Of a stretch of 64,000 bases of DNA, positions 12,996 through 58,648 are shown piece by piece. The translations under genes and the position numbers were made by a program. This DNA comes from Macrostomum lignano (taxonomy: Eukaryota), in NCBI GenBank assembly GCA_002269645.1, contig NIVC01001780.1:173999-237998 (forward strand). The letters are read 5' to 3'. The notes beneath the pieces are model-generated. The model saw nothing but the letters and a program-made list of their open reading frames with translations. It was not told the origin of the DNA and did not search any database. Position 1 is the stretch's first letter. Each line of letters opens with the position of its first letter.

Positions 12996-13008
12996 ACAGG
13001 TATCTCAC

Positions 13009-13423: not shown

Positions 13424-13554
13424 CTGCTCGGGGTCAGGGGAGGTGAGGGGCGCTGGGCCTGACTTGCGGTACTTGAAATTGGAGGGATTGTCATGTGGGA
13501 AAATAGGTGAGCTGGCATGCTCAGATTGAATTAAACAAAGACAGGCCGATCTAG

Positions 13555-27429: not shown

Positions 27430-27653
27430 GTGAGCGTAGCGGAATTCACAATCGGTACTGTTCTAATCCTAAATGTACATGCACTCCTCCCCTTGCACTA
27501 GGCATAGCATCCATGGTTTAACACGCATTTAGACACGCAATCTATGAATGCAGCTTTAGCATTTGATCGACTGCAAGTTGATATGGCGAACGAAGCACTC
27601 GTGTTGATCTCAGCAGAGTAGCAGCGTGCTCGATATCTCGTTTGTCATTCCAG

Positions 27654-37955: not shown

Positions 37956-38384
37956 GCTAGTCTCAGGCAACAAAACGCAGACCTGTCCCTTGAAAAAGCT
38001 GCCACCAGATTCCCTGTGCAGCACCGGGTGCGGTTTATGCGTCGACCGATGCCAGCCGTTAAGGCGACCGGTGTCGGCGGCCGGCAGGTGCGAGCCACCG
38101 TGCCAGTTGCAGTAGTCCTTGAGCAGAGTTGGTGGTTGCACTGACGAGTTGAAGGCCCGTCTCTGTCCGGCAGGCTTCTGCTGTTGCAGCTCCTGCTCAG
38201 AACTGAAAACTGACATATTTTTTTTCCAAACTGAGAAAGATAATTAGCGCATATATACACTAGCATAAAACTATTTTTTTCTTTCTTTTTTGATAGTCCA
38301 GTTTCTTTTATAGTAGTAGCTAGGCTTTTTCAGCTTCGGGTGTCGACTAAATGCTTCATGGATAACTCTGCTCTAGAAAGGGCG

Positions 38385-40310
38385 AGAGGAGAGAGAGATG
38401 GAGAGGGAGAGAGAGATGGAGAGGGAGAGAGAGAGATGGAGAGGGAGAGAGAGATATAGAGGGAGAGAGAGAGAGATGGAGAGGGAGAGAGAGAGAGATG
38501 GAGAGGGAGAGAGAGATGGAGAGGGAGAGAAAGAGATGGAGAGGGAGAGAGAGAGATGGAGAGGGAGAGAGAGAGAGAGAGATGGAGAGGAGAGAGAGAG
38601 AGAGATGGAGAGGGAGAGAGAGAGAGATGGAGAGGGAGAGAGAGAGAGATGGAGAGGGAGAGAGAGAGGGAGAGGGAGAGAGAGATGGAGAGGGAGAGAG
38701 AGAGAGATGGAGAGGGAGAGAGAGAGAGATGGAGAGGGAGAGAGAGAGAGATGGAGAGGGAGAGAGAGAGATGGAGAGGGAGAGAGAGAGATGGAGAGGG
38801 AGAGAGAGAGAGAGATGGAGAGGGAGAGAGAGAGATGGAGAGGGAGAGAGAGATGGAGAGGGAGAGAGAGAGAGATGGAGAGGGAGAGAGAGAGAGATGG
38901 AGAGGGAGAGAGAGAGAGATGGAGAGGGAGAGAGAGAGAGAGATGGAGAGGGAGAGAGAGATGGAGAGGGAGAGAGAGAGAGAGATGGAGAGGGAGAGAG
39001 AGAGAGATGGAGAGGGAGAGAGAGAGAGAGATGGAGAGGGAGAGAGAGAGATGAAGAGGGAGAGAGAGAGAGATGGAGAGGGAGAGAGAGAGATGGAGAG
39101 GGAGAGAGAGAGAGATGAAGAGGGAGAGAGAGAGATGGAGAGGGAGAGGGAGAGAGATGGAGAGGGAGAGAGAGATGGAGAGAGAGAGAGAGAGATGGAG
39201 AGGGAGAGAGAGAGATGGAGAGAGAGAGAGAGAGATGGAGAGAGAGAGAGAGAGATGGAGAGGGAGAGAGAGATGGAGAGGGAGAGAGAGAGATGGAGAG
39301 GGAGAGAGAGATATAGAGGGAGAGAGAGAGAGATGGAGAGGGAGAGAGAGAGAGATGGAGAGGGAGAGAGAGATGGAGAGGGAGAGAAAGAGATGGAGAG
39401 GGAGAGAGAGAGATGGAGAGGGAGAGAGAGAGAGAGAGATGGAGAGGGAGAGAGAGAGAGAGATGGAGAGGGAGAGAGAGAGAGATGGAGAGGGAGAGAG
39501 AGAGAGATGGAGAGGGAGAGAGAGAGGGAGAGGGAGAGAGAGATGGAGAGGGAGAGAGAGAGAGATGGAGAGGGAGAGAGAGAGAGATGGAGAGGGAGAG
39601 AGAGAGAGATGGAGAGGGAGAGAGAGAGATGGAGAGGGAGAGAGAGAGATGGAGAGGGAGAGAGAGAGAGAGATGGAGAGGGAGAGAGAGAGATGGAGAG
39701 GGAGAGAGAGATGGAGAGGGAGAGAGAGAGAGATGGAGAGGGAGAGAGAGAGAGATGGAGAGGGAGAGAGAGAGAGATGGAGAGGGAGAGAGAGAGAGAG
39801 ATGGAGAGGGAGAGAGAGATGGAGAGGAGAGAGAGAGAGAGATGGAGAGGGAGAGAGAGAGAGATGGAGAGGGAGAGAGAGAGAGAGATGGAGAGGGAGA
39901 GAGAGAGATGAAGAGGGAGAGAGAGAGAGATGGAGAGGGAGAGAGAGAGATGGAGAGGGAGAGAGAGAGAGATGAAGAGGGAGAGAGAGAGATGGAGAGG
40001 GAGAGGGAGAGAGATGGAGAGGGAGAGAGAGATGGAGAGAGAGAGAGAGAGATGGAGAGGGAGAGAGAGAGATGGAGAGAGAGAGAGAGAGATGGAGAGA
40101 GAGAGAGAGAGATGGAGAGGGAGAGAGAGAGATGGAGAGGGAGAGGGAGAGAGAGAAAGATGGAGAGGGAGAGAGAGAAAGATGGAGAGGGAGAGAGAGA
40201 GAGATGGAGAGGGAGAGAGAGAGAGATGGAGAGGGAGAGAGAGAGATGGAGAGGGAGAGAGAGAGAGATGGAGAGGGAGAGAGAGAGAGATGGAGAGGGA
40301 GAGAGAGAGA
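38385..40310. repeat. ~1.9 kb polypurine (GGAGAGGGAGAGAGAGAT-type) repeat
   Basis: Directly visible; source of the MERER/SLSL ORFs. Confidence 0.97.
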
Positions 40311-40710
40311 GTTTCAAAACTGGTTTTGCGCGAGACCTCCAGAAGACGCAATATTGGTCCCGACTGCGGTCTTTTCTTTCCCAGCCGCCTGCCTGCTTTG
40401 ATTCTAACGGCCTTTATAGACAGCTTTGCATGGGGTATTAGTGAATGCAAGCGGGTGTTGAGATACGTAATGCGTTCTGACCTCTATAAAGTACTCTAGA
40501 AAGACAGAGATGGAGAAAGAGTCTGGGGAGAGCCTATAAATTGTCTGCTATGGTGGACACAGGCACAAAAACAAATAATATGGACTTGTAAAGGTGATGC
40601 CCTACAATACAATACAATACAACCATACAATATGGTTGAACCCACACTGTATGCCCTCCGATATGAAATACTCAGCCCTTGTATAAGACATTTAGAACCT
40701 TCGCGATCCA

Positions 40711-41300
40711 CAGGGGCGTCGTCATGGATTTTATGGTGGGGGGGACAAAGCCAAGAATTTTAAAAGTGCATGTACATGAAAAATAAGTTCCTACTTGTAC
40801 ATTACATGTATTTTTTAATCAGTGTCGCCAGCACTCATTTTAGCGCCGCAGGCACTCATTTTAGCGCAGCAGACACTCATTTTAGCGCCGCAGGCACTTA
40901 TTTTAGCGCCGCAGACACTCATTTTAGCGCCGCAGACACTTATTTTAGCGCCGCAGACACTTATTTTAGCGCCGCAGACACTCATTTTAGCGCAGCAGAC
41001 ACTCATTATAGCGCCGCAGGCACTCATTTTAGTAGAGCCGCAGGCAGTCATTTTAGCGCCGCAGGCAGTCATTTTAGCGCAGCAGGCAGTCATTTTAGCG
41101 CCGCAGGCACTCATTATAGCGCAGCAGACACTCATTTTAGCGCAGCAGACACTCGTTTTGGTGCTACAGGCGCTATATTTTATTTTGTCGCCCAGAAGCA
41201 AAATAATTTATTTTCATAACAGGTCAACAAAGGTGGGGTGTGGGGGAGACAAACCGCTGGCCCCCTTGTCCCCCTGTCCCTCCTGGTGGCGAAGCCCCTG
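40711..41300 (+). mobile_element. MITE family 'CAGGGGCG' with ~16 units of the 21-bp internal minisatellite
   Basis: TIRs CAGGGGCGTCGTCA / TGGCGAAGCCCCTG. Flanks GCGATCCA / GCCATCGA are 6/8 identical, a possible decayed 8-bp TSD (hAT-like). Confidence 0.82.
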
Positions 41301-41849: not shown

Positions 41850-42174
41850 ATCCCTACGTTGGTGAATGGTGTGTTTCCGGGATGTATTTTTACCATAGAC
41901 ATAAATCTCAGGGTTTAGATTTAGGTTAGGGTCAGGTGACGCATTGTTAAAAACAATTCAGTTTGTTCCAATCACAACTAAGGAAGTCACTATGTAGCGT
42001 ACTTAAAATCAATTGTTAACAACGACGGAGCAGTTATTGAAGTTAAAATTCTCGGAGATTCTGTATGGCTCATCTCCTAGCATTAGGCGATTCTTTGTAT
42101 GTAATCAAATATGCGCAGTATCGTGCACAGATATTAAAACACTAGATATTTCACTCCGCATTGAGTTAAGACCT

Positions 42175-42585
42175 ATTTGTTTATTCGATTGCCTATTTTT
42201 TTATTTGATTGCCCTTTTTGTTTATTCGATTGCCCTTTTTGTTTATCTGATTGCCCTTTTTGTTTATTCGATTGCCCTTTTTGCTTATTCGATTGCCCTT
42301 TTTGTTTATTCGATTGCCCTTTTTGTTTGTTCGATTGCCCTTTTTGTTTGTTCGATTGCCCTTTTTGTTTGTTCGATTGCCCTTTTTGTTTGTTCGATTG
42401 CCTATTTTTTATTTGATTGCCCTTTTTGTTTATCTGATTGCCCTTTTTGTTTATTCGATTGCCCTTTTTGTTTATCTGATTGCCCTTTTTGTTTATTCGA
42501 TTGCCCTTTTTGTTTATTCGATTGCCCTTTTTGTTTATTCGATTGCCCTTTTTGTTTATTCGACTGCCCTTTTTGTTTATCCAAA
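42175..42585. repeat. 21-bp minisatellite (TTGTTTATTCGATTGCCCTTT)n
   Basis: About 19 units. Confidence 0.95.
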
Positions 42586-43129: not shown

Positions 43130-43390
43130 AATATCTAGATACTGGTGTCACCTGTTAGATACTGATGTCACCTGTTAGATACTGGTGTCACCTGTTAGAT
43201 ACTGGTGTCACCTGTTAGATACTGATGTCACCTGTTAGATACTGATGTCACCTGTTAGATACCCATGTCACCTGTTAGATACCCATGTCACCTGTTAGAT
43301 ACTGGTGTCACCTGTTAAATACTGATGTCACCTGTTAGATACCCATGTCACCTGTTAGATACCCATGTCACCTGTTAGATACTGATGTAA
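43130..43390. repeat. 20-bp minisatellite (ACTGGTGTCACCTGTTAGAT)n
   Basis: About 13 units. Confidence 0.95.
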
Positions 43391-43990
43391 AGTGTCGCTG
43401 GCAAACCCAAGCAACATTCTCCATCTGTTTCGAGCTCAGCAACACAAAATCCTCAGTCATAAGCATTTTTCTGCAAAATATTTGCCATACAATTGCAAAC
43501 TAAATTGAAAATCGTCAGAGAGCTCCGCTTGGTTTCCAGGCCTCAGCCCTGCCCTCCCTCCCCTCTCCATCTCTCCCCTCGTTTCTCAGCTGCCCCACCC
43601 CTGCCCACTGACAATGCACTTGCTATGCCCAGCACGCAGCCACAGTCAGCTCTCATTGTTTAACTCAGCAGAGCTCGCAGCATCTCACTGCTCCTGCATC
43701 TCTCACCCCGCTGAGCAGAGCAGCTGCCGGGCCCCCTGGCACCCAATCAGGCCTCAAACACAGCCGCTGGGTCAGAGAAGAGAATCGGCCTCAGTCCATT
43801 TAAACAAATTTCTCTGCACAGGGAGAGCTCAGAGATTTCAGTCCGTGACAGCGGCACTTTTGCTGCTGCTGCTGAGCTGGCAGGCAAATTCGCTTGAAGA
43901 AGAGCAAAGCACTCAGTTTGAAGCCGTGTGGAACAGCTGCGGCAGACAGCAGATCGGCAGAGAAGCGCTGCTAGGAGAAGCAGTGTAGCC

Positions 43991-45561
43991 ATGGCAACGC
44001 AGATAAAGCGGAAGCTGAGAGCGGCGCTGGAGGCTGGAGACAGCGAGGAGCTGCAGCGACTGTGCGGTGAGGTCAGCAGCAACATCGAGCTGGAGGTGGG
44101 CGGCTTCGACAAGCAAGAATATCCATCTAAAGAGCTTTTCATGCCGCTGGCCCATCACGTGGCCTGCAAGCCGGTGAGCTCGTCGTGCCTGGAGCTGCTG
44201 ATTGACAGATTCGGACGCGACTGTCTGACACATGGAAATGGTAGGCTTATTCGTGAGACTCCAGTGCACTTGGCTGCCCAGCATCAGGACGAATCTTGGA
44301 TGGAGCTGGTTAAAGAGAAGGGAGGCAGAGGCTGCTTGAGAATTGCCAATGAACATGGAAAGACAGTCGCTCACTTTGCCGCTATGAACAGAAAAAGCAA
44401 CTCTTGTCTGAAGTGGCTGGTGAAGGAGCTCGGCAGCGTCTGTCTCACAGTTCCTGACGAAGACGGTATCACGGCAGTCCATTTGGCCGCTGAGCATCAG
44501 GGCATCGAGTCGCTGGAGTGGATCAAGAGACAGATCGGAACTCGCTGCTTTCGGCTGAAGGGAGGATTGAGGTATAGAACAGCATTTCACTTCGCTGCTC
44601 AGAAGTCTGACAATTCAAATCTGAAGTGGCTGGTGAAGGAGCTCGGCAGCGACTGTCTCACAGTTCCTGACGAAGACGGTGACACGGCCGTCCATTTGGC
44701 CGCTGAGCATCAGGGCATCGAGTCGCTGGAGTGGATCAAGAGACAGATCGGAACTGGCTGTTTTCGGCTGAAAGGAGGGTTCTGGAAGAGAAAAGCATTT
44801 CACTTTGCTGCTCAGAAGTCTGACAATTCAAATCTGAAGTGGCTGGTGAAGGAGCTCGGCAGCGACTGTCTCACAGTTCCTGACGAACACGGTGAAACGG
44901 CCGTCCATTTGGCCGCTCAGTATCAGGGCATCGAGTCGCTGGAGTGGATCAAGAGACAGATCGGAACTGACTGCTTTCGGCTGAAAGGACCCTTGGATAG
45001 AACGGCATTTCACTTTGCTGCTCAGAAGTCTGACAATTCAAATCTGAAGTGGCTGGTGAAGGAGCTCGGCAGCGACTGTCTCACAGTTCCTGACAAAGTC
45101 GGTGACACGGCCGTCCATTTGGCCGCTGAGCATCAGGGCATCGAGTCGCTGGAGTGGATCAAGGGACAGATCGGAACTGACTGCTTTCGGCTGAAGAAAT
45201 GTTCAGGTAGAACAGCATTTCACTTTGCTGCTCAGAAGTCTGACAATTCAAATCTGAAGTGGCTGGTGAAGGAGCTCGGCAGCGACTGTCTCACAGTTCC
45301 TGACAAATACGGTGACACGGCCGTCCATTTGGCCGCTCAGCATCAGCCAGTCGACTGTCTTCAGTTCATTTTTGACCAAATCGGAGCCGAAATGTTCAGC
45401 TTGAAGAACAACAGGGGCGAAACACCGGCTGATGTTGTTGCGAGTCGGCGGTGCCTCACAGACAAGTCAGCAAAGCGGGCCTGGATTTCCTCCACGCAGC
45501 GGCAGCTCGAAGCCTCTCGGCCTCCCGCTGGCAGCTCAGCGCCGACTGCCGCCTCAGCTGG
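43991..45561 (+). CDS. Ankyrin-repeat/protein-kinase gene, exon 1 (about 12 ankyrin repeats)
   Basis: GCCATGG start at 43991; repeated GxTAVHLAA / RTAFHFAA motifs; donor GG|GTGAGT, phase 2. Confidence 0.92.
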
Positions 45562-45704
45562 GTGAGTCCTGACTGAGAACTGCTGCCTGACACTGAAAAT
45601 ACTGAAAATATTGTTTGGCGAAATTTCATTGCGCTTTGATGATCGGCGCTCTGAAATTCTCAGCAGCGCCGCAGTCAAGCGAGGGCGTCATGAATGTCAG
45701 TGCA

Positions 45705-46135
45705 GCTCCTCATGGCGCCCCCAACCTCCCCATGGTGCCTCCAACCTCCCCATGGCGCCTCCAACCTCCCCATGGCGCCTCCAATCTCCTCATGGCGCCC
45801 CAACCTCTCCATGGCGCCTCCAACCTCCCCATGGCGCCCCAAACTCCCCATGGCGCCTCCAATCTCCTCATGGCGCCCCCAACCTCCCCATGGCGCCCCA
45901 AACTCCCCATGGCGCCTCCAATCTCCTCATGGCGCCTCCAATCTCCCCATGGCCTTCCAATCTCCCCATGGTGCCTCCAATCTCCTCATGGCGCCTCCAA
46001 CCTCCCCATGGCGCCTCCAATCTCTTCATGGCGCCCCAAACTCCCCATGGCGCCTCCAATCTCCTCATGGCGCCTCCAATCTCCCCATGGCCTTCCAATC
46101 TCCCCATGGCGCCTCCAATCTCCTCATGGTGCCCC
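45705..46135. repeat. ~21-bp intronic minisatellite (CCTCCAATCTCCCCATGGCGC variants)
   Basis: Visible tandem units. Confidence 0.92.
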
Positions 46136-46222
46136 AACCGCCTTGGCGCCTTGGTGCCGCCAAGTGCCGCCTTGGCAACCCAGACATGTTTAACGGGCTC
46201 ACTCGTAAAACTCTTCCTACAG

Positions 46223-46294
46223 CGCTGCAGCTCCGCGTCCCCGCCCACGAGCTCGACAGACCCTCCGGCCGTTTGGACTGCCTGAGGAGACTCG
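46223..46294 (+). CDS. Ankyrin-kinase gene, probable 72-nt exon 2 (AAAPRPRPRARQTLRPFGLPEETR)
   Basis: CTCTTCCTACAG| acceptor and |GTGAGA donor. Symmetric phase 2-2 and open in the joining frame. Confidence 0.65.
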
Positions 46295-46403
46295 GTGAGA
46301 AATGATGAGGCGACAGTTGGTGAATTCGTCAAAACCTGCAGTCTGAGCGCAGGCACCCAGCCAAAAGGAACCTGGCACTTCATGGCCCCCGAGGATGCTC
46401 ATG

Positions 46404-46838
46404 GCAGAAGGGTGGTGACGCAGAAGGGTGGTGACGCAGAAGGGTGGTGACGCAGAAGGGTGGTGACGCAGAAGGGTGGTGACGCAGAAGGGTGGTGACG
46501 CAGAAGGGTGGTGACGCAGAAGGGTGGTGACGCAGAAGGGTGGTGACGCAGAAGGGTGGTGACGCAGAAGGGTGGTGACGCAGAAGGATGGTGACGCAGA
46601 AGGGTGGTGACGCAGAAGGGTGGTGACGCAAAAGGGTGGTGACGCAGAAGGGTGGTGACGCAGAAGGGTGGTGACGCAGAAGGGTGGTGACGCAGAAGGG
46701 TGGTGACGCAGAAGGGTGGTGACGCAGAAGGGTGGTGACGTAGAAGGGTGGTGACGCAGAAGGGTGGTGACGCAGAAGGGTGGTGACGCAGAAGGGTGGT
46801 GACGCAGAAGGGTGGTGACGCAGAAGGGTGGTGACGCA
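46404..46838. repeat. 16-bp intronic minisatellite (CAGAAGGGTGGTGACG)n
   Basis: About 27 near-perfect units. Confidence 0.97.
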
Positions 46839-46916
46839 GTAGGCTGAGTGACTCCAAAGTACTCAGAAAGCCCCAAGCAACACAAAATTCATCAATTCCT
46901 TCATTTTATGCTTCAG

Positions 46917-47022
46917 CGCCAAGAAGCAGCTGGACCCCAGCTTCACCAACTGGGACTTCATCCTGCAGGACGACAAGAAGCAGCTCATCGGTCGTGGCGG
47001 ATTCGGTGAGGTGTACAAGGCA
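46917..47022 (+). CDS. Ankyrin-kinase gene, exon with the kinase Gly-rich loop; truncated by the retrotransposon
   Basis: GCTTCAG| acceptor in phase; AKKQLDPSFTNWDFILQDDKKQLIGRGGFGEVYKA (GxGxFG.VY). I found no later kinase subdomains downstream. Confidence 0.85.
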
Positions 47023-47141
47023 AGCGGTCCCCCTCCTGGTGTCGGGCCAGCCTTGAGGGTTCTATTGGCCTACTGCCCGGTCAGGTGGAGCGGCCAGGTG
47101 GGTACCGCGCCCCTTTGAGGGTAGCCCACCAACCTTTTATC

Positions 47142-48667
47142 ATGGCCTTCGAGCCGATTATGGATAACAAAGCTTTTTCTAGGGACGGGGACCCTTCTAA
47201 ACCCCAACCTCAGTCCGAAGGACCGGCCGGCCCTGCTGGCAGATCCCAACCGACTGATTCAACTGTGGCAAAGGAAGGACCGGCTGGCTCTGCTGGCAGA
47301 TCCGACCAGAGCTACCAAACTCATAATACCCAAAGACCTGCCAGCTCCGCTGGTGGATCTAAGGGAACCGCGAGCTCTGAGCCTAAAGGACCGGCCAAAT
47401 CTGGCAGATCCGATGAAGCTCAGCGGGCTCGGCTTGAGCGCAAACGCGCTAAACAACGCGCCAAAAGGCAGGCCAAGAAGGGAGCTGCGGGGGCCAAAGC
47501 GGCGGCGTCCACCATGGATGCTGAAGCGACTGGCGTCCCAAGGCAACCAGACGGGCCGGCCGGTGGAAGCTCCGGTAGTTCAGCGGCGGCGCTCCCTGGA
47601 GATGCTGCTGCGGCTGCTGAGGCCGAAACCACGGCGCAACAAATGGCCACTGCCAACAAGGAGGTTCCTTCGGGAGCTACCTTTGCGGCGAAGGCCAAGG
47701 CCAAAATCCCGGGAGTGATCATCCAAGGTCGCGACCAGGACTGGACCACTGATCAGCTTCAAAAAGTGTGTAGTGCTGTTGACTCCTATCTGATTGGGCT
47801 GACTGTCGAGGAGGGAATCTCCATCGGCATTGAGCGGATGGTGCTGCGAAGCACATTCGTTCTTATTGCTCCTAGCAGCGAGGAGGACGCTCGGCAGCTG
47901 CTCCAGCGGCTACCAACGGTCTCCTTGGATGCTGACCTTGGCGAAGCTCTTTTTCTTCGCGAGGGCCAGCGTCCAAAGACGATACCCTATGTGGTTTTCG
48001 TCCCTGCTAAGAGCACCGCAGCTGGACCAGACGTTATTCGCCGGGTCCTACTGCGTCTGAACCCCGACCTCCCTGCTAGTGGACTGGTGTATCATCGTAA
48101 AGTCCGCAGGGGGAGACGGGCAACTCAATTGTCCTCGGCCTTTCCAGCACTTGGGCGAGTCGGTACCCTAATGGATCCTCTTTCCAGCTGGGTGCCCTCA
48201 AGCTCAAGATGCGCCGAGGAAAGTCTGCCAAAGGGAAGGCTACTGCCAACCCCGGCATCTCCGGCAAGAGCGGGGCGCAGTCTAAGGCCCAAGGAAAGGC
48301 GCAAGCCGATCCCAAAGCCAAAGTTGCATCTCGCCCCTCTGCTAGCAGCAGTTCGGCGACCGCGGTAACGGCTCCGGCCAAGCCCCGGGAACCAAACCTG
48401 CCAGTCGGAGAAGGAGTTGAGGACGAGGCCGGGTCTTCGGAATCCGAGCTCTCCTTGGCCATCCTGGTGGGGTCTGAAGGTAAAGATGCAGGTGAGGAAG
48501 CTTCCTCCATCCTGTCATCGGAGCCTGAGGACTCTGCTGGGGGGGGGGGGGCGGTGGGGGTGAGGAGGCCATGGACGTCGACCAACTTCCATCTCCCAGC
48601 CAAGCCCCAGCGGCCTGGGACGAGGACGATCTGTTGTCCAAGTCTCCTTGCTGGCCCTGGGCTCTAG
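47142..48667 (+). pseudogene. Retrotransposon ORF1, split by a frameshift near 48.1-48.2 kb
   Basis: ATG at 47142; basic/low-complexity N-terminus; PKTIPYVVFVP...LLRLNPDLP; C-terminus continues in ORF 48209-48667. Confidence 0.75.
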
Positions 48668-48690
48668 CCAGAAATTGCATTTAATACAGT

Positions 48691-51600
48691 ATGACTAAGC
48701 TCCACGCTGCCAAAAGAGCGACATTCTGTCTGCAAATTAATTTACAGCATTGCGTATCTGCGTCAGTAAATCTGATGAAGATTGCTGAGCTGTACAGGCC
48801 AGGCCTCATCCTGATCCAGGAACCCTGGATGCGCAACGGTAAGTTGCCCAACATTCCCTATGGCTACTCTGATTTTTATGTGTGTGGCCCGGGGAACAGC
48901 CGCCCTAGAGCGGCTATCCTCGCTGCTAGCCATCTCCAGGCTTGGCTGAGGACTGATCTCTCTGATGGAGACCTTTGCGTCATTCAATCTAATCATTTCT
49001 CTCCGCGTACGTGTCTTGTTGCCTCGGTTTATATCCCAGGCGACAGAGACCCTGCTCCTGAGAGTTTACTGCGCCTCGCGCAGTACTGCAAGTCCCAGAA
49101 CGCTGAGCTGTGCTTAGGGGGTGACCTCAACGCGCACCACAAGCACTGGGGCAGCAAAGATACCAACACTAGAGGAGAGGAGCTTCTGGCCCTCATCTCT
49201 AACACAAACCTCATGCTCTGCAACCGCGGCAGCACTCCTACCTTTAATAATGGCAGATGGACCGAGGTCCTCGACGCCACACTCGTTACCCCTCAAGACT
49301 CTTTGACAGAGTTGAGGAGTGGAGAGTCTGGTCTGAGGAGCCCTCCCTGTCTGACCACTGCTTTATCGCCTTTAACATCGCGGACACTAAAACCCAGTCT
49401 CCGATCACTTGGAGACACAATATCCGCAACACTGATTGGGCGGCCTACAAGGCTGCCCTTGATCTGCACCTGCAGGAACTCACGGACTTACGTCCGATTG
49501 AGACCTGCGAGGATGTGGATCATATGGCTGAGACGCTGACAGGTTGCATTATTGAAGCCTACGAAGCGGCTTGTCCTGCTCGCGCCTACAAAGGCAAGAC
49601 CTCGGCGCCGTGGTGGAACCCGGAGCTGGGGAAACTCAGGCGGAAGGCCAAAAGCCTTCATCGCCGTGCCATGAAGACCGGAAACCCGGAGGACATGGAG
49701 CTTTTCGGGCAAGCCTCCCGCAATTTCAAATCTGAAGTGCGCAAGGCCAAGGAATGTAAGTGGCGCCAATTCTGCAATGAATTGGATCAAGACAGACCTA
49801 CTTCTAGGCTTGTCAAGGCCCTTACAATGGACAAAATGTCCAAATTAGCCATGATCAAAAAAGATGATGGCTCTCTTACTAAAGACCCTGAAGAAGTGCT
49901 TCAGCATATGCTTAGCACATTCTTCCCGAGGGTACCTACTGCTAGACCGGAGCCCAACCATTCGATGGATGGAGCCACCCTAGCGGCGGGCATTGTCACT
50001 GAAGACCTAATCGCTCGTGCGGTCAGAACCTTCAAACTTCAGCCTACAACCTTCAGAACCTGATGGTATCTACCCTGTTCTCCTTCGTGAAGCAGCCAAG
50101 ATACCCTCGTTCCTGAGACTCACCCGCAATCTTATGCGGGCCTCTATCCAGCTGGGATACGTTCCCAAATGCTGGACTGAAGCTCGGGTAGTCTTCATTC
50201 CCAAACCTGGGAAGGGTGACTACCAAAGCGTCAAAGCCTTCCGGCCTATTAGCTTAACGTCAGCAATGCTTAAGCTCACTGAGAGGCTTATTCTCTGGCG
50301 GCTGCTGTCCTGCGAGCTGACAGCGATGCCCCTCAGCAATAATCAGCAAGCCTTCCGTACCGGGAGGTCGACTGACAGCGCCCTGCATGCGATTGTCGAG
50401 AAGATTGAAAGGGCGGTACTGGGTGACGGTTACGCTCTGGCTCTCTTTCTTGACATTGTTGGCGCCTTCGACAACGTTATCTTTGAAGCGTTTCAGAGGG
50501 CCCTTCAAAATCGCAAAGCTCATGCTACCCTCATACGGTGGATCATGTACATGATCTCCAACCGTACGGTCACTGCCCAACTTCTTGGGCAAACTGCCTC
50601 CACCAGAGTATGTAAGGGTGGACCCCAAGGCGGAGTCCTCACCCTGACGCTCTGGAACCTGCTCATGGACGCTCTTTTGAGTGACTCCCGACCCGACCCC
50701 GTCTTCAAAGTCGGGTATGCTGATGACGTCACGGCCATTGTGGCAGGACCGTCTCCCAGCACGCTCAGGGATCTGATGCAGAGCTTTATCCGCAATGCAG
50801 AATCCTGGGCCAATGACAATGGTCTGGAACTCTCTGAGCCCAAAACCGTTGCCATTATGTTTACCAGCAGACTACGCTGGAACATACGTCCTCTGCAGCT
50901 CTACGGCAGAGATATTGCCTTCGCGCACCAGACCAGATGCCTCGGGGTCATACTTGACCACCGGCTCAACTGGTCCTCCCACGTGAAAGCAAAAGCCAAG
51001 CGTGCCTCAGCCATCCTGGCCCAGCTCCGACGAGCACTTGGCACTTCTTGGGGTCTATCCCCAAAGCGGCTTTGGTGGATCTATACTTCCGTAGTTAGAC
51101 CTGCCATTACGTACGCCTCTGTTGTCTGGGTTAGCGCTACCCAGGTCAAAAGCCATGCAGACCTGCTCAACACGATCCAAGGCAGAGCGTGTAGGCTCAT
51201 CTGCAACGCCACCAGGTCCACGCCCTTTGCTGGCATGGGGGCCTTCCTTAATCTTCCGCCTCTTGACCTCTTCATCAGGGGTGAGGCGGCTAGAACGACG
51301 CGGCGTCTAATTGATGCCGGCGTCAAATTCATTTACATGAGAGCACCTGCTAAGCGGAACCTTGTCCCGCATAGCGATCTGTGCCTCAACTTTCTCAACG
51401 AGTGTCAGGCCAATCGCGTCTTCACCGATGGCATTGCCTCAACGCTCAACCTGAGACAGCGCTACTCCGTAGCTATCGACTCGCGCGATAACATCAATGA
51501 CCAATGGAACCCTGGTGAGCTTCATTGCTACACCGACGGTTCTAAGCAGTCAGCCAACACCGGCTTTGGTGTTGGAATCTTTCTGAACGGGAGGGTCATC

Positions 51601-52437
51601 GCTACCCACGCTCAATACACTGGGGTCAACTCCAGTGTTTTCCAAAATGAAGTTCTGGCCATCAGCTCCTGCACTGCAGAGCTTCTCGCCACTGGCGTTA
51701 CTGGTAAGAACATCATTTTCCATTCGGACAGCCAAGCTGCCTTGCACGCCATCAGTGGCTGCAGCACCAACTCTGCTACAGTCCTCGACTGTATCAAACT
51801 CCTCAACGTGTTGGGTTCCGCCAACAAAATTACCCTTAAGTGTGTTCCGGGGCATGTGGGGATCCGAGGAAATGAGTTGGCTGGCACCTTTGCAAAAGTT
51901 GGTGCCTCCGGCTCCTCTCTCGGCCCCGAACCTCTTGTCCCGATTCCTGGCTGTGTCATCGACTCGCGCATCAAAGCGTGGATCAGGACTCAGCACCGCT
52001 CGACTTGGGCGAACCGCACGAACTGCAGGCAATCCAGAGGCGCTGTCCCTCAGCCCTCTCACCAGCTCCAGAAGCTCCTCTTGCGCCTCTCGCGCAGAGA
52101 CATCCGGGCTGCCACCATGACCCTCTCTGGTCACGGCTGCTTCTCCAGGCACCAGTACCTGCAGGGCAACGCCACCAACGCCACCTGTAGTTTCTGCAAC
52201 TCAGGTGACGAAACCGCTGAGCATTTCGTCAGCATCTGTCCCGCCTTCACGCGGGCCAGACTCACTTACCTCGGGCCACACACATCTATTACTGAAGCGT
52301 GCAAACCCGAAAACTTTAATCAGCTCATGCGCTACCTTCGGGCCACCCGCAGGGCTGAACTCTCCTTTCCAGAGAGCACCATAGCTGCTGGCGACACTGG
52401 GGGACCTCCCTGGGCGGCGCCAACCCTCCGTCCATAG
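48691..52437 (+). pseudogene. Retrotransposon ORF2 (pol), split over three frames
   Basis: Track ORFs 48691-49539, 49257-50063 and 50017-52437 carry consecutive domains. Some motifs deviate (CVPGH, GNELAG). Confidence 0.92.
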
Positions 52438-53504
52438 CGACGCGTCGGCCGTTCAGGGACTAGCGGAATGGGCGCCCGCGCCTTCCCGCTGTGTCCCCTC
52501 CGGGACAGCCCTGCAGCTAAGTCTAAAAAAAATCTTTCAGTGCGGACTTTCTTAAATTTTACACCGACTTAATGCGAGCGCTTATATCGAGGCTCAGGGG
52601 TATCAGGGTATAAAGCTGTTCATGTACACTCACACTCACTCTGGCCTCCGCGATGCTATTGACTGGCGCAGGTGAGGCATAGCAAATGGAAGGAAAGGGA
52701 GGGAAAGAGTTTCACTCTATTTTTAGCTCGAGGCAAGCCCGGTTTGTTTACTTAGCTTGGGTTGAGGGCAGCAGTAATAGGACTGTATTAGCTGCAGCCT
52801 GTAAGATCAATTATAAGGTTTAGCTAAAGACCTGTCTCTAGCTTTATTTCGTCAAATGCATAATTGCATGATTGATTACACTCGGAGTCATCCAATCTTC
52901 CCTTTTGTGCTATTTATGATTTGCACCTACAGACTCCAAAGCAGTTAGTGCCAGTTTGCTACAAATTATAGATTAGACACAAACGCTAGCAGTCATTCGA
53001 CAATCGACAAGGAAAACAAAGTAAAAAACTGACTATCGAGTACTTTTGTCACTAAAATCAGTTTGATGCTGGAAACTTGGTGCATTTAATATTTGGTGTC
53101 AGTGTGGAAGCATAGAAATGACCCAGCAATTACATCATGGCATCTAAGTTACATTAGAGCTAGAAATTAGCTGCAATTCACATACTCAAATATGCAAAGC
53201 AGGATTCATTCGATACTCAAAGTGAGTATGTTTTCCAGGAAATAGCTGTAGGATTAGCTCGATGGGTAAAAAACTCGACCTAATCTACGGTGCTGTGTAT
53301 TCTGTCCAGGAAACTTTTGGGATGTCCTGACTCTTCAAGGGCTACTTAAAAGTAGCCACTAAGGCATAAAAAGCTTTATTTTGAAAAATCATCTCAACAG
53401 GAGAGCGGGAAAATTAGCCTCGATCTAATACCTCGAGTGTAAAATAACCTCGAACAAGCCGTGACTTCCAACTTGCAGAGTATCGACCTAATCCGGCACA
53501 GATA

Positions 53505-54748: not shown

Positions 54749-55237
54749 CTATCCATTCGTGTGGGTGAGCGGCACCACAATCACTGGCCGGTGCGCATGG
54801 TGAACAACATAGTCCGATACGCTGCCAAGCATGGTTCGTTGAAGTCGTTTCAATCCGCGAGTGCCCATTAGAATGGCGGCAGCGTCTAGTTCTGTTGCCA
54901 TGGCAACAATCGCCTTGCTCGGTTCGGCTTCGTACTTGTCAATGAACTTGACGGAGTCTGCTGGCAAGCCCAACTGTTGGCAGAGTGCCAAGCAGTGTTT
55001 GCGCACCCTGTCGATCTGGGCTGACGATTCTTGCATCAGCTGGGTGTACAGCTCTGTCTTGGACATCTTCAAGGTCGTGTTGCCGCGAGGCAGCGGCGGG
55101 GCTTCAACTGAATAAAAGATCACCAGCTGAGTGTCTCTTTCAGCATTGAGTCTGGCGAACCAGCTCAGAGCGGCCTGGCTGTTCTCACTGTTGTCGTAGG
55201 CGAGTAGAAACACGGTGGGCTGCTGGGGCGAGGTCAT
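54749..55237 (-). CDS. Universal stress protein (USP domain), intronless, 162 aa
   Basis: N-terminal LLAYDNSENSQAAL and C-terminal ILMGTRGL...LGSVSDYVVHHAHRPVIVV, the G-x2-G-x9-GS nucleotide-binding motif. Confidence 0.93.
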   Translation of the reverse strand: MTSPQQPTVFLLAYDNSENSQAALSWFARLNAERDTQLVIFYSVEAPPLPRGNTTLKMSKTELYTQLMQESSAQIDRVRKHCLALCQQLGLPADSVKFIDKYEAEPSKAIVAMATELDAAAILMGTRGLKRLQRTMLGSVSDYVVHHAHRPVIVVPLTHTNG

Positions 55238-55499
55238 GGCCTATGAGCAGTATATGAGCAGCTTGTGATATCGCTTAGCATAAAACTATTTAGTGTTACA
55301 TTACTTATAAATTAAAATCTCATAACAAACTTTCTCTCGTTCGAGATCAGATAAGAAAAGAGCTGCTGGTTCGGTCTTATTTGTATACGTACTCGATACG
55401 GTTTGAACAAATTTGAAACTCGAGAGCTCTGCACGCATGTTGCACTGACATAAACTGCACACGATTCAAAGGGGACAAAAAAGCAGAAAAACAAAAACG

Positions 55500-57245
55500 A
55501 ACCGTAAATTGCGAGCCGGAGAAGGGGAGTGAGGAGGGAATAGAGATAGGAGAAGATGAGTGAAAAGGAGGAGAGGAAAGAAGAGGAGAGATGTAATTGA
55601 TGAAGGAAGAGAAGATAGGAAAGAAGAGGAGAGAAGGGAGAGAAGGGAGAGAAGGGAGAGAAGAGAAGAGAAGAGAGAGAAGAGGAGAGAAGGGAGAGAA
55701 GAGAAGAGAAGGGAGAGAAGGGAGAGAAGGGAGAGAAGGGAGAGAAGGGAGAGAAGGGAGATAAGGGAGAGAAGAGGAGAGAAGGAGAGGAAAGAAGGGA
55801 GAGAAGGGAGAGAAGGGAGAGGAGGGAGAGAAGGGAGAGAAGAGGAGAGAAGAGAAGAGAAGGAAGAGAAGCTAGAAGGGAGAGAAGAGAAGAGAAGGGA
55901 GAGAAGGGAGAGAAGGGAGAGAAGGGAGAGAAGAGAGAGAAGGGAGAGAAGGGAGAGAAGAGGAGAGAAGGAGAGGAAAGAAGGGAGAGAAGGGAGAGAA
56001 GGGAGAGGAGGGGAAAGAAGGGAGAGAAGCGGAGAGAAGGGAGAGATGGAGAGAAGGGAGAGAAGGGAGAGAAGGGAGAGAAGAGGAGAGAAGGAGAGGA
56101 AAGAAGGGAGAGAAGGGAGAGAAGGGAGAGGAGGGGAAAGAAGGGAGAGAAGCGGAGAGAAGGGAGAGAAGGGAGACAAGGGAGAGAAGGGAGAGAAGGG
56201 AGAGAAGAGGAGAGAAGGAGAGGAAAGAAGGGAGAGAAGGGAGAGAAGAGGAGAGAAGGAGAGGAAAGAAGGGAGAGAAGGGAGAGAAGAGGATAGAAGG
56301 AGAGGAAAGAAGGGAGAGAAGGGAGAGAAGGGAGAGGAGGGGAAAGAAGGGAGAGAAGCGGAGAGAAGGGAGAGATGGAGAGAAGGGAGAGAAGGGAGAG
56401 AAGGGAGAGAAGAGGAGAGAAGGAGAGGAAAGAAGGGAGAGAAGGGAGAGAAGGGAGAGGAGGGGAAAGAAGGGAGAGAAGCGGAGAGAAGGGAGAGAAG
56501 GGAGACAAGGGAGAGAAGGGAGAGAAGGGAGAGAAGAGGAGAGAAGGAGAGGAAAGAAGGGAGAGAAGGGAGAGAAGAGGAGAGAAGGAGAGGAAAGAAG
56601 GGAGAGAAGGGAGAGAAGAGGAGAGAAGGAGAGGAAAGAAGGGAGAGAAGGGAGAGAAGAGGAGAGAAGGAGAGGAAAGAAGGGAGAGAAGGGAGAGAAG
56701 GGAGAGGAGGGGAAAGAAGGGAGAGAAGCGGAGAGAAGGGAGAGAAGGGAGAGAAGAGGAGAGAAGGAGAGGAAAGAAGGGAGAGAAGGGAAAGAAGGGA
56801 GAGAAGGGAGAGAAGGGAGAGAAGGGAGAGAAGGGAGAGAAGCGGAGAGAAGGGAGAGAAGGGAGAGAAGGGAGAGAAGGGAGAGAAGAGGAGAGAAGGA
56901 GAGGAGAGAAGGGAGAGAAGGGAGAGAAGAGGAGAGAAGGAGAGGAAAGAAGGGAGAGAAGGGAGAGAAGAGGAGAGAAGGAGAGGAAAGAAGGGAGAGA
57001 AGGGAGAGGAGGGGAAAGAAGGGAGAGAAGGGAGAGAAGGGAGAGGAGGGAGAGAAGGGAGAGAAGAGGAGAGAAGAGGAGAGAAGGGAGAGAAGGGAGA
57101 GAAGGGAGAGGAGGGGAAAGAAGGGAGAGAAGGGAGAGAAGGGAGAGGAGGGGAAAGAAGGGAGAGAAGGGAGAGAAGGGAGAGGAGGGGAAAGAAGGGA
57201 AAGAAGGGAGAGAAGGGAGAGAAGGGAGAGAAGGGAGAGAAGGAG
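55500..57245. repeat. ~1.7 kb almost pure-purine repeat (GAGAAGGGA)n with higher-order duplications
   Basis: Directly visible. Confidence 0.97.
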
Positions 57246-57519
57246 TCAAAGTGTTGTATTTGTCCAGCTGGCCCACTTAAGCGAGAAAAGTCAGAGATTT
57301 CCCAGGAAATTTGGTAAAATTTTACACAGCAACATTTTTTGTCAATGTCGCTCACTGCAAGGAGCAAATTTACCTGACACTGCATGCTTACTGGCAGATT
57401 CCGGTTTTATTTCGGAAAACGCTGGAATAACAAATTTAATAATCTGCTAATAGCCCTTATATTGTATCTTAATCTTCTGTCCAAGTGTGTGTCTTTGTGT
57501 CAGTCTGTTTTTGCACCTG

Positions 57520-58648
57520 TCTGCCAGCGCCAAAACGAGTACATTTGGCGCAAAAATGAGTGCCTGCGGCGCCAAATTGAGTGCCTGCGGCGCCAAAATG
57601 AGTGTCTGCGGCGCCAAAATGAGTGCCTGCGGCGCCAAATTGAGTGCCTGCGGCGCTAAAATGAGTGCCTGCGGCGCCAAAATGAGTGTCTGCGGCGCCA
57701 AAATGAGTGTCTGCGGCGCCAAAATGAGTGCCTGCGGCGCCAAATTGAGTGCCTGCGGCGCCAAAATGAGTGCCTGCGGCGCTAAAATGAGTGCCTGCGG
57801 CGCTAAAATGAGTGCCTACGGCGCCAAAACGAGTGCCTGCGGCGCCAAAATGAGTGCCTGCGGCGCCAAAATGAGTGCCTGCGGCGCCAAAATGAGTGCC
57901 TGCGGCGCTAAATTGAGTGCCTACGGCGCCAAAACGAGTGCCTGCGGCGCTAAAATGAGTGCCTGCGGCGCTAAAATGAGTGCCTACGGCGCCAAAACGA
58001 GTGCCTACGGCGCCAAAATGAGTGCCTGCGGCGCCAAAATGAGTGCCTGCGGCTATAAAATGAGTGCCTGCGGCTATAAAATGAGTGCCTGCGGCTATAA
58101 AATGAGTGCCTGCGGCGCCAAAATGAGTGCCTGCGGCGCCAAAATGAGTGCCTGCGGCGCTAAATTGAGTGCCTATGGCGCTAAAATGAGTGCCTGCGGC
58201 GCCAAAATGAGTGCCTGCGGCGCTAAATTGAGTGCCTGCGGCGCCAAAATGAGTGCCTGCGGCGCCAAAATGAGTGCCTGCGGCTATAAAATGAGTGCCT
58301 GCAGCGCTAAAAGGAGTGCCTGCGGCGCCAAAATGAGTGCCTGCGGCTATAAAATGAGTGCCTGCGGCTATAAAATGAGTGCCTGCAGCGCTAAAAGGAG
58401 TGCCTGCGGCGCCAAAATGAGTGCCTGCGGCTATAAAATGAGTGCCTGCGGCTATAAAATGAGTGCCTGCGGCTATAAAATGAGTGCCTGCGGTGCCAAA
58501 ATGAGTGCCTGCGGCGCCAAAATGAGTGCCTGCGGTGCCAAAATGAGTGCTGACAACACCGATTCTCAAACTAATGCAGGAATTTAGTCAATTCTTGGCT
58601 TCGAGTCCCCTCCCCCTTACCATGAAATCCATGGCGATAAAAACCCTG
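57520..58648 (-). mobile_element. MITE family 'CAGGGGCG' copy with ~48 units of the 21-bp minisatellite (GAGTGCCTGCGGCGCCAAAAT)
   Basis: Same unit as at 40830 (opposite strand). The right flank AATTCTTGGCTT...CCATGAAATCCATGGCGAT...CCCTG matches the family terminus; the left terminus was not found. Confidence 0.75.

What the first reader, a model, noticed from the sequence alone, without database searches (positions are those of the whole stretch)
43991..47022. Natural DARPin-like hypervariable ankyrin array spliced to a protein kinase: candidate variable-specificity sensor kinase
Seen: the core is ~4.3 tandem units (starts 44439, 44652, 44865, 45075, 45285; lengths 213, 213, 210, 210 bp; two ankyrin repeats each). 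Their framework is nearly identical at DNA level, including most synonymous sites. Amino-acid differences cluster in short windows: EDGI/EDGD/EHGE/KVGD/KYGD before TAVHL; AAEH/AAEH/AAQY/AAEH/AAQH after helix 1; and GGLRY/GGFWK/GPLD/KCSG (with a 1-codon indel) before the AFHFAA helix. The exon splices in phase (45561>46223..46294>46917) to LIGRGGFGEVYK. Known: these beta-turn and helix-1 positions form the ankyrin binding surface and are the ones randomised in DARPin libraries. Inference: homogenised framework plus diversified binding loops suggests a receptor family under diversifying selection, i.e. a possible invertebrate intracellular recognition (immune-like) kinase system.
Basis: partly seen in the sequence, partly recalled or inferred. 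Interest (0 to 1): 0.78.

Follow-up and report, generated by a model that had tools for sequence, protein, structure and literature searches.

The report
Hypervariable ankyrin array, kinase cut off
This flatworm gene belongs to an undescribed, fast-diversifying family in which a near-identical tandem ankyrin scaffold carries binding-surface residues under strong positive selection and is normally fused to a protein kinase, but in this copy a retrotransposon has cut the kinase off.

Summary
Window 43991-45561 is one exon of Macrostomum lignano encoding 13 ankyrin repeats. Its core is a 213/210-bp coding tandem array of 4.4 copies, each unit two ankyrin repeats.

Amino-acid differences cluster at the positions randomised in DARPin libraries (P=1.4e-5 within the window).

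I collected 39 units from this locus and eight paralogous loci. Seven codons per unit change amino acid 4-8 times faster than the synonymous rate. The framework has dN/dS about 0.6 and the kinase domain about 0.37. Arrays hold 2-13 units.

Two corrections:
- In this copy, homology to all eight paralogues stops at 47021, inside the first kinase exon. A non-LTR retrotransposon follows, and the other ~250 kinase residues are absent from the whole window. This copy is therefore an ANK-only remnant or pseudogene.
- Nothing links the family to immunity. A role in reproduction is equally open.

The evolutionary regime is already known from fungal NLR repeats and PRDM9. What is new is the setting: an animal, an STE-like kinase as partner, and no NOD domain.

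The parts
43776..43990 (+). Conserved 5' flank / 5'UTR of the gene
   Evidence: It is 98-99.5% identical to the same position in L001, L004 and L007, and 96% to L008. This is more conserved than synonymous sites of the adjoining coding sequence (N-cap dS 0.108).
43991..45561 (+). Exon 1: the complete ankyrin domain (523 codons), made of N-terminal cap repeats, the tandem array, and the C-terminal cap plus linker
   Evidence: The frame is open from the ATG at 43991. Pfam finds Ank_2, Ank_4 and Ank. The AlphaFold2 model has pLDDT 91.8 and pTM 0.82, with 13 helix pairs. The best structural matches are long ankyrin solenoids and extended DARPins. It is 86% identical to P0002 over residues 1-522.
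44408..45253 (+). Four full di-ankyrin units (44408-44620, 44621-44833, 44834-45043, 45044-45253; 71, 71, 70 and 70 codons). Codon k of a unit lies at unit start + 3(k-1); in the two 70-codon units, subtract 3 for k above 55. The strongly selected codons are k = 18, 19, 21, 29, 53, 54 and 65.
45254..45346 (+). Partial fifth unit (first 31 codons), after which the sequence diverges into the C-terminal capping repeats
   Evidence: Tandem Repeats Finder ends the array at 45346.
45562..46222 (+). Intron 1, carrying a 20-bp minisatellite (45706-46137, 22 copies)
   Evidence: GT donor and AG acceptor. Tandem Repeats Finder result. The intron and its minisatellite are shared with the paralogues.
46223..46294 (+). 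Exon 2: Pro/Arg-rich linker (AAAPRPRPRARQ...GLPEETR), present in some paralogues only
   Evidence: The in-frame splice reproduces the sequence of P0002, P0003 and P0009. P0006, P0008 and P0014 lack this exon.
46322..46393 (+). Relic of a kinase activation-loop exon (TCSLSAGTQPKGTWHFMAPE) lying inside intron 2
   Evidence: tblastn matches it to P0007 at 83% and P0010 at 75%. The same relic follows exon 2 in L001 at 12471-12596 and at 3664-3807.
46404..46852 (+). 16-bp minisatellite (28 copies) in intron 2
   Evidence: Tandem Repeats Finder. It is present with other copy numbers in L001-L004 and L006.
46917..47021 (+). Remnant of exon 3: 35 of 129 codons, ending in the glycine-rich loop (LIGRGGFGEVYK). 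This is the last family-homologous base.
   Evidence: It is 97% identical to P0002 residues 552-586. Alignments to all eight paralogous loci end at 47021. The breakpoint is GTGTACAAGGC|AAGCGG.
47022..52532 (+). Non-LTR retrotransposon that replaces the rest of the kinase. It has an ORF1 with no Pfam match, then endonuclease, reverse transcriptase, RNase H and a short poly(A). ORF2 is split over three frames.
   Evidence: ORFs. Pfam finds Exo_endo_phos, RVT_1 and RNase_H. The poly(A) is at 52525-52532. It has no match in the eight paralogous loci.

Best explanation
The window holds one copy of a recently expanded gene family. In the databases I searched, the family appears only in the flatworm Macrostomum lignano. 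Intact members are soluble proteins with an N-terminal ankyrin solenoid, a short linker and a C-terminal STE-like serine/threonine kinase.

Shown:
- The solenoid is built from a 70/71-residue di-ankyrin unit encoded by a 210/213-bp coding tandem array within a single exon.
- Unit number differs between loci (2 to 13), and units at different loci are about as similar as units within one locus.
- Seven codons per unit accept amino-acid changes several times faster than the synonymous rate. They lie in the beta-turn before helix 1 and at the end of helix 1 of each repeat.
- The framework and the kinase are under purifying selection.
- In this window's copy, a non-LTR retrotransposon replaces everything after the glycine-rich loop, so the copy cannot be a kinase.

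Inferred:
- Unit number changes by unequal recombination, and units are exchanged between paralogues.
- The concave ankyrin face binds rapidly changing protein ligands.
- Ligand binding controls or targets the kinase, which signals through a MAP-kinase-type cascade.
- This copy is either a pseudogene or an ANK-only product ending in about 36 residues read from the transposon.
For: Species and family: all close hits are M. lignano proteins. About 25 carry both Ank and Pkinase domains.

Array.

Position of variability: among 41 units from annotated proteins, entropy peaks at alignment columns 18, 19, 22, 30, 53-58 and 66. In the 71-codon numbering used elsewhere these are codons 18, 19, 21, 29, 52-57 and 65.

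Selection, measured on 39 DNA units from nine loci:
- Pooled Nei-Gojobori at 13 a-priori DARPin-equivalent codons gives dN 0.377 and dS 0.153. The framework gives dN 0.035 and dS 0.060.
- A tree-free lower bound on substitution events gives a nonsynonymous rate at those codons 2.4 times the pooled synonymous rate (P=6.6e-6). Fisher's test of hypervariable against framework codons gives P=1.5e-4.
- Nineteen disjoint closest pairs give a ratio of 6.3 (P=1e-29).
- Per-site counts on a neighbour-joining tree single out codons 18, 19, 21, 29, 53, 54 and 65, at 4-8 times the synonymous rate, significant after Bonferroni correction.

Kinase: dN/dS is 0.36-0.38. VAVK, HRDIKSSN, DFG and APE are intact in six paralogues. 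The best solved relatives are SLK, STK25, MST4 and ASK1, at E about 1e-35.

Fold: pLDDT 91.8. The variable residues flank helix 1.

Solubility: no 19-residue window exceeds hydropathy 1.3, which argues against a membrane span.

Truncation.
Against: - No expression, ligand or phenotype data exist for any member, so the sensing mechanism is inference.
- Recombination among units violates the tree assumption of the per-site test. The tree-free and disjoint-pair tests reduce this problem but do not remove it.
- Synonymous divergence is also about 3 times higher at the hypervariable codons (0.104 against 0.032). This could reflect old patches moved by micro-conversion, a local mutation bias, or a path-averaging artefact in multi-hit codons.
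- The cap regions also show high dN/dS (0.84 and 1.48), so part of the signal may be general relaxation.
- Unit counts depend on a long-read assembly of a difficult polyploid genome. Annotated proteins disagree with their own loci: P0003 has 4 units and L002 has 13.
- The truncation rests on a single assembly.
Confidence: 0.72

Rival explanations
1. The family is real and under diversifying selection, but it serves reproduction or another internal conflict (sperm or seminal-fluid interactions, meiotic drive, transposon control), not pathogen recognition.
For: Nothing found ties the family to immunity. Papers returned report that reproduction-related genes evolve rapidly in Macrostomum (PMC7336406, from its title and abstract only). 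The best-known animal case of this evolutionary regime, PRDM9, is a germline gene (PMC8925151, from its abstract).
Against: There is no evidence for a gonadal role either. The flanking genes (universal stress protein, topoisomerase I, V-ATPase subunit H) are uninformative.
Confidence: 0.3
2. This copy is not dead. Having lost its kinase, it is expressed as an ANK-only protein that acts as a decoy or regulator of its kinase-bearing relatives.
For: The 523-codon ankyrin exon has no stop or frameshift. The 5' flank is 98-99.5% identical to those of intact paralogues. Reading on from exon 3 reaches a stop after about 36 codons. Related ANK-only proteins are annotated in the species (P0001, P0016, P0017, P0024-P0026).
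Against: An intact frame is also expected if the truncation is simply recent. The transposon's ORF2 is broken into three frames, so the insertion may not be very recent, although long-read indel errors could produce the same breaks. No exact product of this locus is on record. The closest annotated protein is only 86% identical.
Confidence: 0.25
3. The truncation, the unit numbers, or both are assembly artefacts of a repeat-rich polyploid genome, and the real locus is an ordinary intact ANK-kinase gene.
For: Annotated proteins and their own loci disagree in unit number. No target-site duplication is visible at the transposon's ends. The sequence after the transposon corresponds to DNA 4.4 kb downstream of a paralogue's 3' end. 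That pattern is what a chimeric join, or equally a real deletion, would look like.
Against: The array has no frameshifts. The break falls at a clean single-base boundary, next to a complete transposon with a poly(A) tail. Upstream and downstream flanks are colinear with those of paralogous loci. A deletion by recombination between two transposon copies explains the missing duplication.
Confidence: 0.12
4. There is no adaptive diversification. The loops are merely unconstrained surface positions in a very young, partly decaying gene family.
For: Paralogues are young (dS 0.05-0.17). The caps show dN/dS near or above 1. Gene fragments lie around the loci, and this copy is itself broken.
Against: Relaxed constraint gives omega near 1. 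It does not give 2.4-6.3 relative to the pooled synonymous rate, or 2.0-3.0 relative to the local one, in four separate tests. The kinase (0.37) and the framework (0.6) are constrained. Nine arrays are all open.
Confidence: 0.08

Closest known systems
Fungal NLR repeat domains with high internal conservation (ANK, TPR and WD repeats of Podospora and other fungi; PMC4986451, PMC12222747, PMC2873952)
   Same: Repeats are near-identical to one another, repeat number varies, and repeats are shared between family members. Positive selection acts on a few positions that map to the beta-hairpin and inner helix of the concave ankyrin face (compared).
   Different: The organism is an animal, not a fungus. 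There is no NACHT or NB-ARC domain. The repeats are N-terminal. The partner is a C-terminal STE-like kinase. The repeating unit is a pair of non-equivalent ankyrin repeats (70/71 residues), not a single repeat.
DARPins (designed ankyrin repeat proteins)
   Same: A constant consensus-like framework carries diversity at the beta-turn positions and at the end of helix 1. In the first repeat of each unit the motif DxxGxT...AAx varies at exactly the x positions. Extended DARPins are among the best structural matches.
   Different: Diversity here is natural and germline-encoded. Only four or so positions per repeat are strongly variable. The second repeat of each unit has a longer loop whose length varies. 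The DARPin position list is from my own knowledge (Binz et al. 2003); the paper I opened (PMC8683736) does not give it.
PRDM9 zinc-finger array
   Same: A coding minisatellite within one exon, a homogeneous framework, positive selection on a few contact residues per unit, and variable unit number (PMC8925151 abstract).
   Different: PRDM9 has zinc fingers that bind DNA, is a single gene with many alleles, and acts through a histone methyltransferase. Here there are ankyrin repeats, many paralogues and a kinase.
RIPK4 / ANKK1 and integrin-linked kinase (the known animal ankyrin-plus-kinase proteins)
   Same: They combine ankyrin repeats and a kinase-fold domain in one cytoplasmic protein. RIPK4 appears among the distant hits.
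   Different: RIPK4 and ANKK1 have the kinase at the N-terminus and the ankyrin repeats at the C-terminus (my knowledge). They match here only through the repeats, at 26-30% identity. ILK is a pseudokinase (my knowledge), whereas this family keeps HRD, DFG and APE. Neither is among the best kinase matches, which are STE20-like kinases and ASK1. I know of no report that either has hypervariable, internally conserved repeats.
Plant kinase-fusion / tandem-kinase resistance proteins (my own knowledge, not checked here)
   Same: They are intracellular proteins in which a kinase is joined to a variable recognition or decoy module, and they lack a NOD domain.
   Different: They are plant proteins with different recognition modules and are not known for internally conserved repeat arrays. 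The comparison is by analogy only.

Membership tests
Ankyrin repeat proteins | Pfam ankyrin models match above their gathering scores, and the protein folds as a stacked helix-turn-helix solenoid | tested here: met
   Ank_2 scores 133.7 bits against a cut-off of 27.3. The AlphaFold2 model has pLDDT 91.8 with 13 helix pairs. Foldseek's best matches are NOMPC, ankyrin-B and DARPins.
Protein kinases (this window's copy) | A complete kinase domain with the catalytic lysine, HRD, DFG and APE | tested here: not met
   Only the glycine-rich loop is present (about 13 residues of the domain). Homology ends at 47021, and no further kinase sequence is found in the window.
Protein kinases (intact paralogues) | A complete kinase domain with the catalytic lysine, HRD, DFG and APE | tested here: met
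   Pkinase scores 189.7 bits in P0002. VAVK, HRDIKSSN, DFG and APE are present in six paralogues, with dN/dS 0.36-0.38.
STE group kinases (STE20 / MAP3K) | Groups with STE kinases in a kinome phylogeny | tested here: inconclusive
   The best solved relatives are SLK, STK25, MST4 and ASK1, at E about 1e-35. I built no phylogeny. No close relative was found outside M. lignano.
RIPK4 / ANKK1 | N-terminal RIP-type kinase followed by C-terminal ankyrin repeats | tested here: not met
   The domain order is reversed. RIPK4 matches at 26-30% identity through the repeats only. RIP kinases are not among the best kinase matches.
Integrin-linked kinase | N-terminal ankyrin repeats joined to a pseudokinase lacking catalytic residues | tested here: not met
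   The domain order is the same, but the catalytic motifs are intact. ILK is not among the 60 best solved matches.
High-internal-conservation repeat receptors (as defined for fungal NLRs, PMC4986451) | Repeats more than 85% identical to one another over at least 100 residues | tested here: met
   The four window units (282 residues) are 86-90% identical in protein. The mean over 39 units is 85%.
High-internal-conservation repeat receptors | Variation in repeat number | tested here: inconclusive
   Paralogous loci hold 2 to 13 full units. Variation between individuals or alleles could not be tested.
High-internal-conservation repeat receptors | Positive selection on positions of the binding surface | tested here: met
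   The positions lie in the beta-turn and at the end of helix 1.
NOD-like receptors (NLR / STAND) | A central NACHT or NB-ARC nucleotide-binding domain | tested here: not met
   Neither the window protein nor P0002 or P0004 has such a domain.
Innate immune receptors (functional class) | Expression in barrier or immune tissues, induction by microbes, and a loss-of-function infection phenotype | not testable with these tools
   No expression or functional data were found.

The most novel reading that the evidence does not exclude
Macrostomum carries a germline-encoded repertoire of DARPin-like intracellular receptors. Each paralogue, and perhaps each allele, presents a different ankyrin binding groove. 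Ligand binding switches on an attached STE-type kinase. This would be a NOD-less class of animal innate recognition receptor, diversified by unit shuffling and positive selection, that converges on fungal high-internal-conservation NLRs and on plant kinase-fusion resistance proteins. Kinase-less copies such as this one would act as decoys.
Probability: 0.2. Interest if true: 0.85.

Novelty: new variant of a known kind. Interest (0 to 1): 0.62.

Why it matters
Internally conserved repeat arrays with positively selected contact residues mark molecules caught in recognition arms races. Known examples are the fungal non-self receptors and PRDM9.

I found no description of an animal ankyrin example, nor of one joined directly to a kinase. 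The family is annotated only as 'hypothetical' or 'protein kinase domain-containing'.

M. lignano is a transgenic, RNAi-amenable laboratory model. The questions 'what do the variable grooves bind' and 'does binding switch the kinase' are therefore directly testable.

The family is also a natural experiment in the DARPin design principle. It shows which scaffold positions evolution chooses to vary, and that a two-repeat unit with one long variable loop is tolerated.

For genome annotation there is a warning. Unit numbers in the deposited gene models do not match their own loci, and truncated copies like this one lie among intact ones.

Tried and rejected
- Rest of the kinase. I searched the whole window on both strands with three paralogues. 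I also searched the sequence after the transposon against eight loci. Nothing was found, which rules out a long intron or an inversion within the window.
- The locus in public assemblies. I looked it up through the exact product of the neighbouring USP gene. It is not on record.
- Expression data. I searched full text for six gene identifiers and the supplements of two M. lignano transcriptome papers. Nothing was found.
- Literature on the family. Three searches found none (and the reads).
- RIPK4/ANKK1 or ILK membership. Rejected on domain order, catalytic motifs and best kinase matches.
- An NLR-type architecture. Rejected because there is no NOD domain.
- Homogenisation within each gene (concerted evolution in the strict sense). 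Units differ by 7.3% within loci and 9.0% between loci, and only 13 of 39 nearest neighbours lie in the same locus. The units therefore behave as a pool shared across the family, not as arrays homogenised gene by gene.
- Other copies of the transposon to define its ends. None occurs in the window or in the eight loci.
- A citable list of DARPin positions. The paper I opened does not give one, so the list rests on my own knowledge.
Full report
**1. What is in the sequence**

The region lies in a eukaryotic genome rich in minisatellites. [quoted passage not shown]

- From the ATG at 43991 an uninterrupted frame runs to a GT donor at 45561/45562.
- Its 523 residues are ankyrin repeats throughout (Pfam Ank_2 E=3.4e-39).
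- AlphaFold2, given an alignment of 23 family members, models it with mean pLDDT 91.8 and pTM 0.82. The model is a continuous stack of 13 helix pairs.
- The nearest solved folds are the long ankyrin solenoids of NOMPC and ankyrin-B, and extended DARPins.

**2.

- Tandem Repeats Finder reports a period-213 array of 4.4 copies with 93% matches (44407-45346).
- In codon register the units begin at 44408, 44621, 44834, 45044 and 45254. They are 71, 71, 70 and 70 codons long, and each encodes two ankyrin repeats.
- The units are 91-93% identical in DNA and 86-90% in protein.
- Among the window's own units, 14 codon columns differ in amino acid and 4 differ only synonymously.
- I fixed in advance the 13 columns that correspond to DARPin library positions. 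These are the x positions of xDxxGxT...AAxx in each repeat, taken from my own knowledge of Binz et al. 2003. Nine of the 14 variable columns fall in that set (P=1.4e-5).
- In the model these residues lie in the turn before helix 1 and at the end of helix 1.

**3. The family**

- The search returned about 25 M. lignano proteins with both ankyrin and kinase domains. The closest is P0002, at 86% identity over the full query.
- Related ANK-only proteins were also returned.
- I fetched eight paralogous loci from assembly GCA_002269645.1. From these and the window I extracted 39 complete units in frame.
- Arrays hold 2 to 13 full units, all in open frames.
- Two pairs of genes lie on the same contigs.
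- Units at different loci differ by 9.0% and units within a locus by 7.3%. Only 13 of 39 units have their nearest relative in their own array. The units therefore form a pool shared by the family.
- Among 41 units taken from annotated proteins, amino-acid entropy is near zero over most of the unit. It peaks sharply at alignment columns 18, 19, 22, 30, 53-58 and 66. That alignment carries one extra gap column; in the 71-codon numbering used below these are codons 18, 19, 21, 29, 52-57 and 65.

**4. Selection**

Four tests agree.

| Test | Hypervariable (a-priori) codons | Framework |
|---|---|---|
| Pooled Nei-Gojobori | dN 0.377, dS 0.153 | dN 0.035, dS 0.060 |
| Tree-free lower bound on events (minimum spanning network of codon states) | nonsynonymous rate 2.4x the pooled synonymous rate, P=6.6e-6 | Fisher's test against framework P=1.5e-4 |
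| Nineteen disjoint closest pairs (statistically independent) | pN 0.26; pooled synonymous pS 0.042; ratio 6.3, P=1e-29; 2.5 against the local pS | 0.65 |
| Parsimony counts on a neighbour-joining tree of 38 unique units | codons 18, 19, 21, 29, 53, 54 and 65 at 4-8x the synonymous rate, Bonferroni-significant | – |

In the fourth test, the 4-8x figure comes from a tree built on all columns. A tree built from framework columns only gives 6-16x.

For comparison, dN/dS in other parts of the gene is:

| Region | dN/dS |
|---|---|
| Kinase exon 3 | 0.36 |
| Kinase exon 4 | 0.38 |
| N-terminal cap | 0.84 |
| C-terminal cap plus linker | 1.48 |

Caveats:
- Recombination among units inflates the tree-based counts.
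- Synonymous divergence is itself about three times higher at the hypervariable codons. I cannot explain this with confidence.
- The sample is nine loci from one assembly.

**5. The kinase**

- Intact members carry a full Pkinase domain (189.7 bits in P0002).
- VAVK, HRDIKSSN, DFG and APE are conserved.
- The nearest solved relatives are STE20-like kinases (SLK, STK25, MST4) and ASK1, at E about 1e-35.
- Outside M. lignano, only generic kinases at 30-34% identity were found.
- No 19-residue window has a hydropathy above 1.3, so the proteins are probably soluble.
- One paralogue (P0004, locus L005) has the same ankyrin exon joined to a kinase only about 40% identical. Ankyrin exons have therefore moved between kinase subfamilies.

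**6. This copy is truncated**

- In intact paralogues the exon that starts with AKKQLDPSF... is 387 bp long. It runs on through the catalytic lysine.
- In the window the same exon starts at 46917. Alignments to all eight loci stop at 47021.
- The base-level alignment places the break at GTGTACAAGGC|AAGCGG.
- What follows is a non-LTR retrotransposon with endonuclease, reverse transcriptase and RNase H domains and a short poly(A) at 52525-52532.
- No further kinase-coding sequence exists on either strand of the window.
- Sequence from 54380 onwards matches DNA that lies 4.4 kb beyond the 3' end of a paralogue.
- So about 250 kinase codons and several kilobases of flank are missing.
- There is no target-site duplication. 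This fits a deletion, for example by recombination between two transposon copies, and it also leaves misassembly possible.
- Read on from exon 3, the frame closes after about 36 codons.
- No annotated protein is closer than 86% identical to this copy. No exact product of the neighbouring gene is on record.

**7. Interpretation**

The scaffold is constant, diversity sits on the binding face, and selection there is positive.

The architectural part is true of the family but not of this locus.

The functional part, an immune-like sensor kinase, is untested. I found no paper on the family and no expression data. A reproductive role is a serious rival, because reproduction-related genes are reported to evolve rapidly in this genus (PMC7336406, abstract).

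My preferred mechanism is as follows. The concave ankyrin face binds rapidly changing protein partners. Binding regulates or targets the attached STE-like kinase. Diversity is produced by unequal recombination and exchange of units, then sorted by selection at seven codons per unit. Only the last of these steps rests on data here.

**8. Comparison with what is known**

- The regime is the one described for the ANK, TPR and WD repeats of fungal NLRs. It combines high internal conservation, repeat-number variation, and positive selection on the concave face. There, ankyrin sites also map to the inner helix and beta-hairpin (PMC4986451; PMC12222747; PMC2873952).
- The same regime holds for the PRDM9 zinc-finger minisatellite (PMC8925151).
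- The differences are the animal host, the absence of a NOD domain, the N-terminal position of the array, a kinase as the only other domain, and a two-repeat unit.
- The family is not RIPK4/ANKK1, because the domain order is reversed.
- It is not ILK, because the catalytic motifs are intact.

I therefore rate it a new variant of a known kind. Interest is moderate to high for the family and lower for this particular broken copy.

Noticed in passing
window 46322-46393; L001 12471-12596 and 3664-3807: A fragment of a kinase activation-loop exon (TCSLSAGTQPKGTWHFMAPE) sits in intron 2 directly after exon 2. It lies upstream of the true kinase exons. The same relic is found at the same place in a paralogue's intron. 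This points to an old internal rearrangement shared by the exon-2-bearing subfamily.
   Followed up: partly
L001 3508-3986: An orphan copy of 'exon 2 + kinase relic + 16-bp minisatellite', 92.7% identical to window 46162-46627, lies about 6 kb upstream of the P0002 gene. It is evidence of gene fragments, and of birth-and-death turnover, around these loci.
   Followed up: no
window 43776-43990: The 215 bp before the start codon are 98-99.5% identical between paralogues whose coding synonymous divergence is about 0.1. This could reflect a conserved promoter or 5'UTR, a trans-splice site, or gene conversion.
   Followed up: no
L002 10001-13459, compared with protein P0003: The locus has an open frame of 1153 codons with 13 full units. 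The deposited protein for that gene has only 4 units. P0002 and L001 likewise differ (4 against 5). Repeat arrays appear collapsed or spliced out in the annotation.
   Followed up: partly
L005 8535-9445 (P0004): This paralogue has an ankyrin exon 81% identical to the window's, joined to a kinase only 38-41% identical to that of the other paralogues. The ankyrin module has been exchanged between kinase subfamilies.
   Followed up: partly
hypervariable codons of the 39 units (window 44408-45253 and loci L001-L008): Synonymous divergence at the hypervariable codons is about 3 times that of the framework (0.104 against 0.032 in disjoint closest pairs). Possible causes are old sequence patches moved by micro-conversion, local mutation bias, or a counting artefact in multi-hit codons.
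   Followed up: no
window 45706-46137, 46404-46852, 40003-40310, 40832-41159, 42172-42580, 43136-43388, about 57500-58550: The region contains many 16-22-bp minisatellites. The two in the gene's introns, and the one in its upstream flank (43136-43388), recur at the same positions in paralogues with different copy numbers.
   Followed up: partly
window 47022-52532: This non-LTR retrotransposon has an ORF1 with no Pfam match, plus endonuclease, RT and RNase H domains. ORF2 is split over three frames (48691-49539, 49257-50063, 50017-52437). It has no other copy in the window or in the eight fetched loci.
   Followed up: partly
window 54752-55237 (-): An intact 162-residue universal stress protein gene (Pfam Usp E=2.3e-25) lies just downstream. 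Its surroundings are colinear with the region downstream of paralogue P0008.
   Followed up: partly
window 38000-40500 and 55300-57400: These are strongly strand-skewed, purine-rich, low-complexity tracts (GC skew 0.83 and 0.64). They give very long spurious ORFs in several frames on both strands.
   Followed up: no
window 6793-8727 (-), 12697-13518 (-), 21716-22864 (-), 27021-27518 (+), 31759-32241 (-): Other coding ORFs in the window are topoisomerase I, V-ATPase subunit H, a rhodopsin-type GPCR, a WSC-domain protein, and a separate short ankyrin ORF distantly related to the family.
   Followed up: partly
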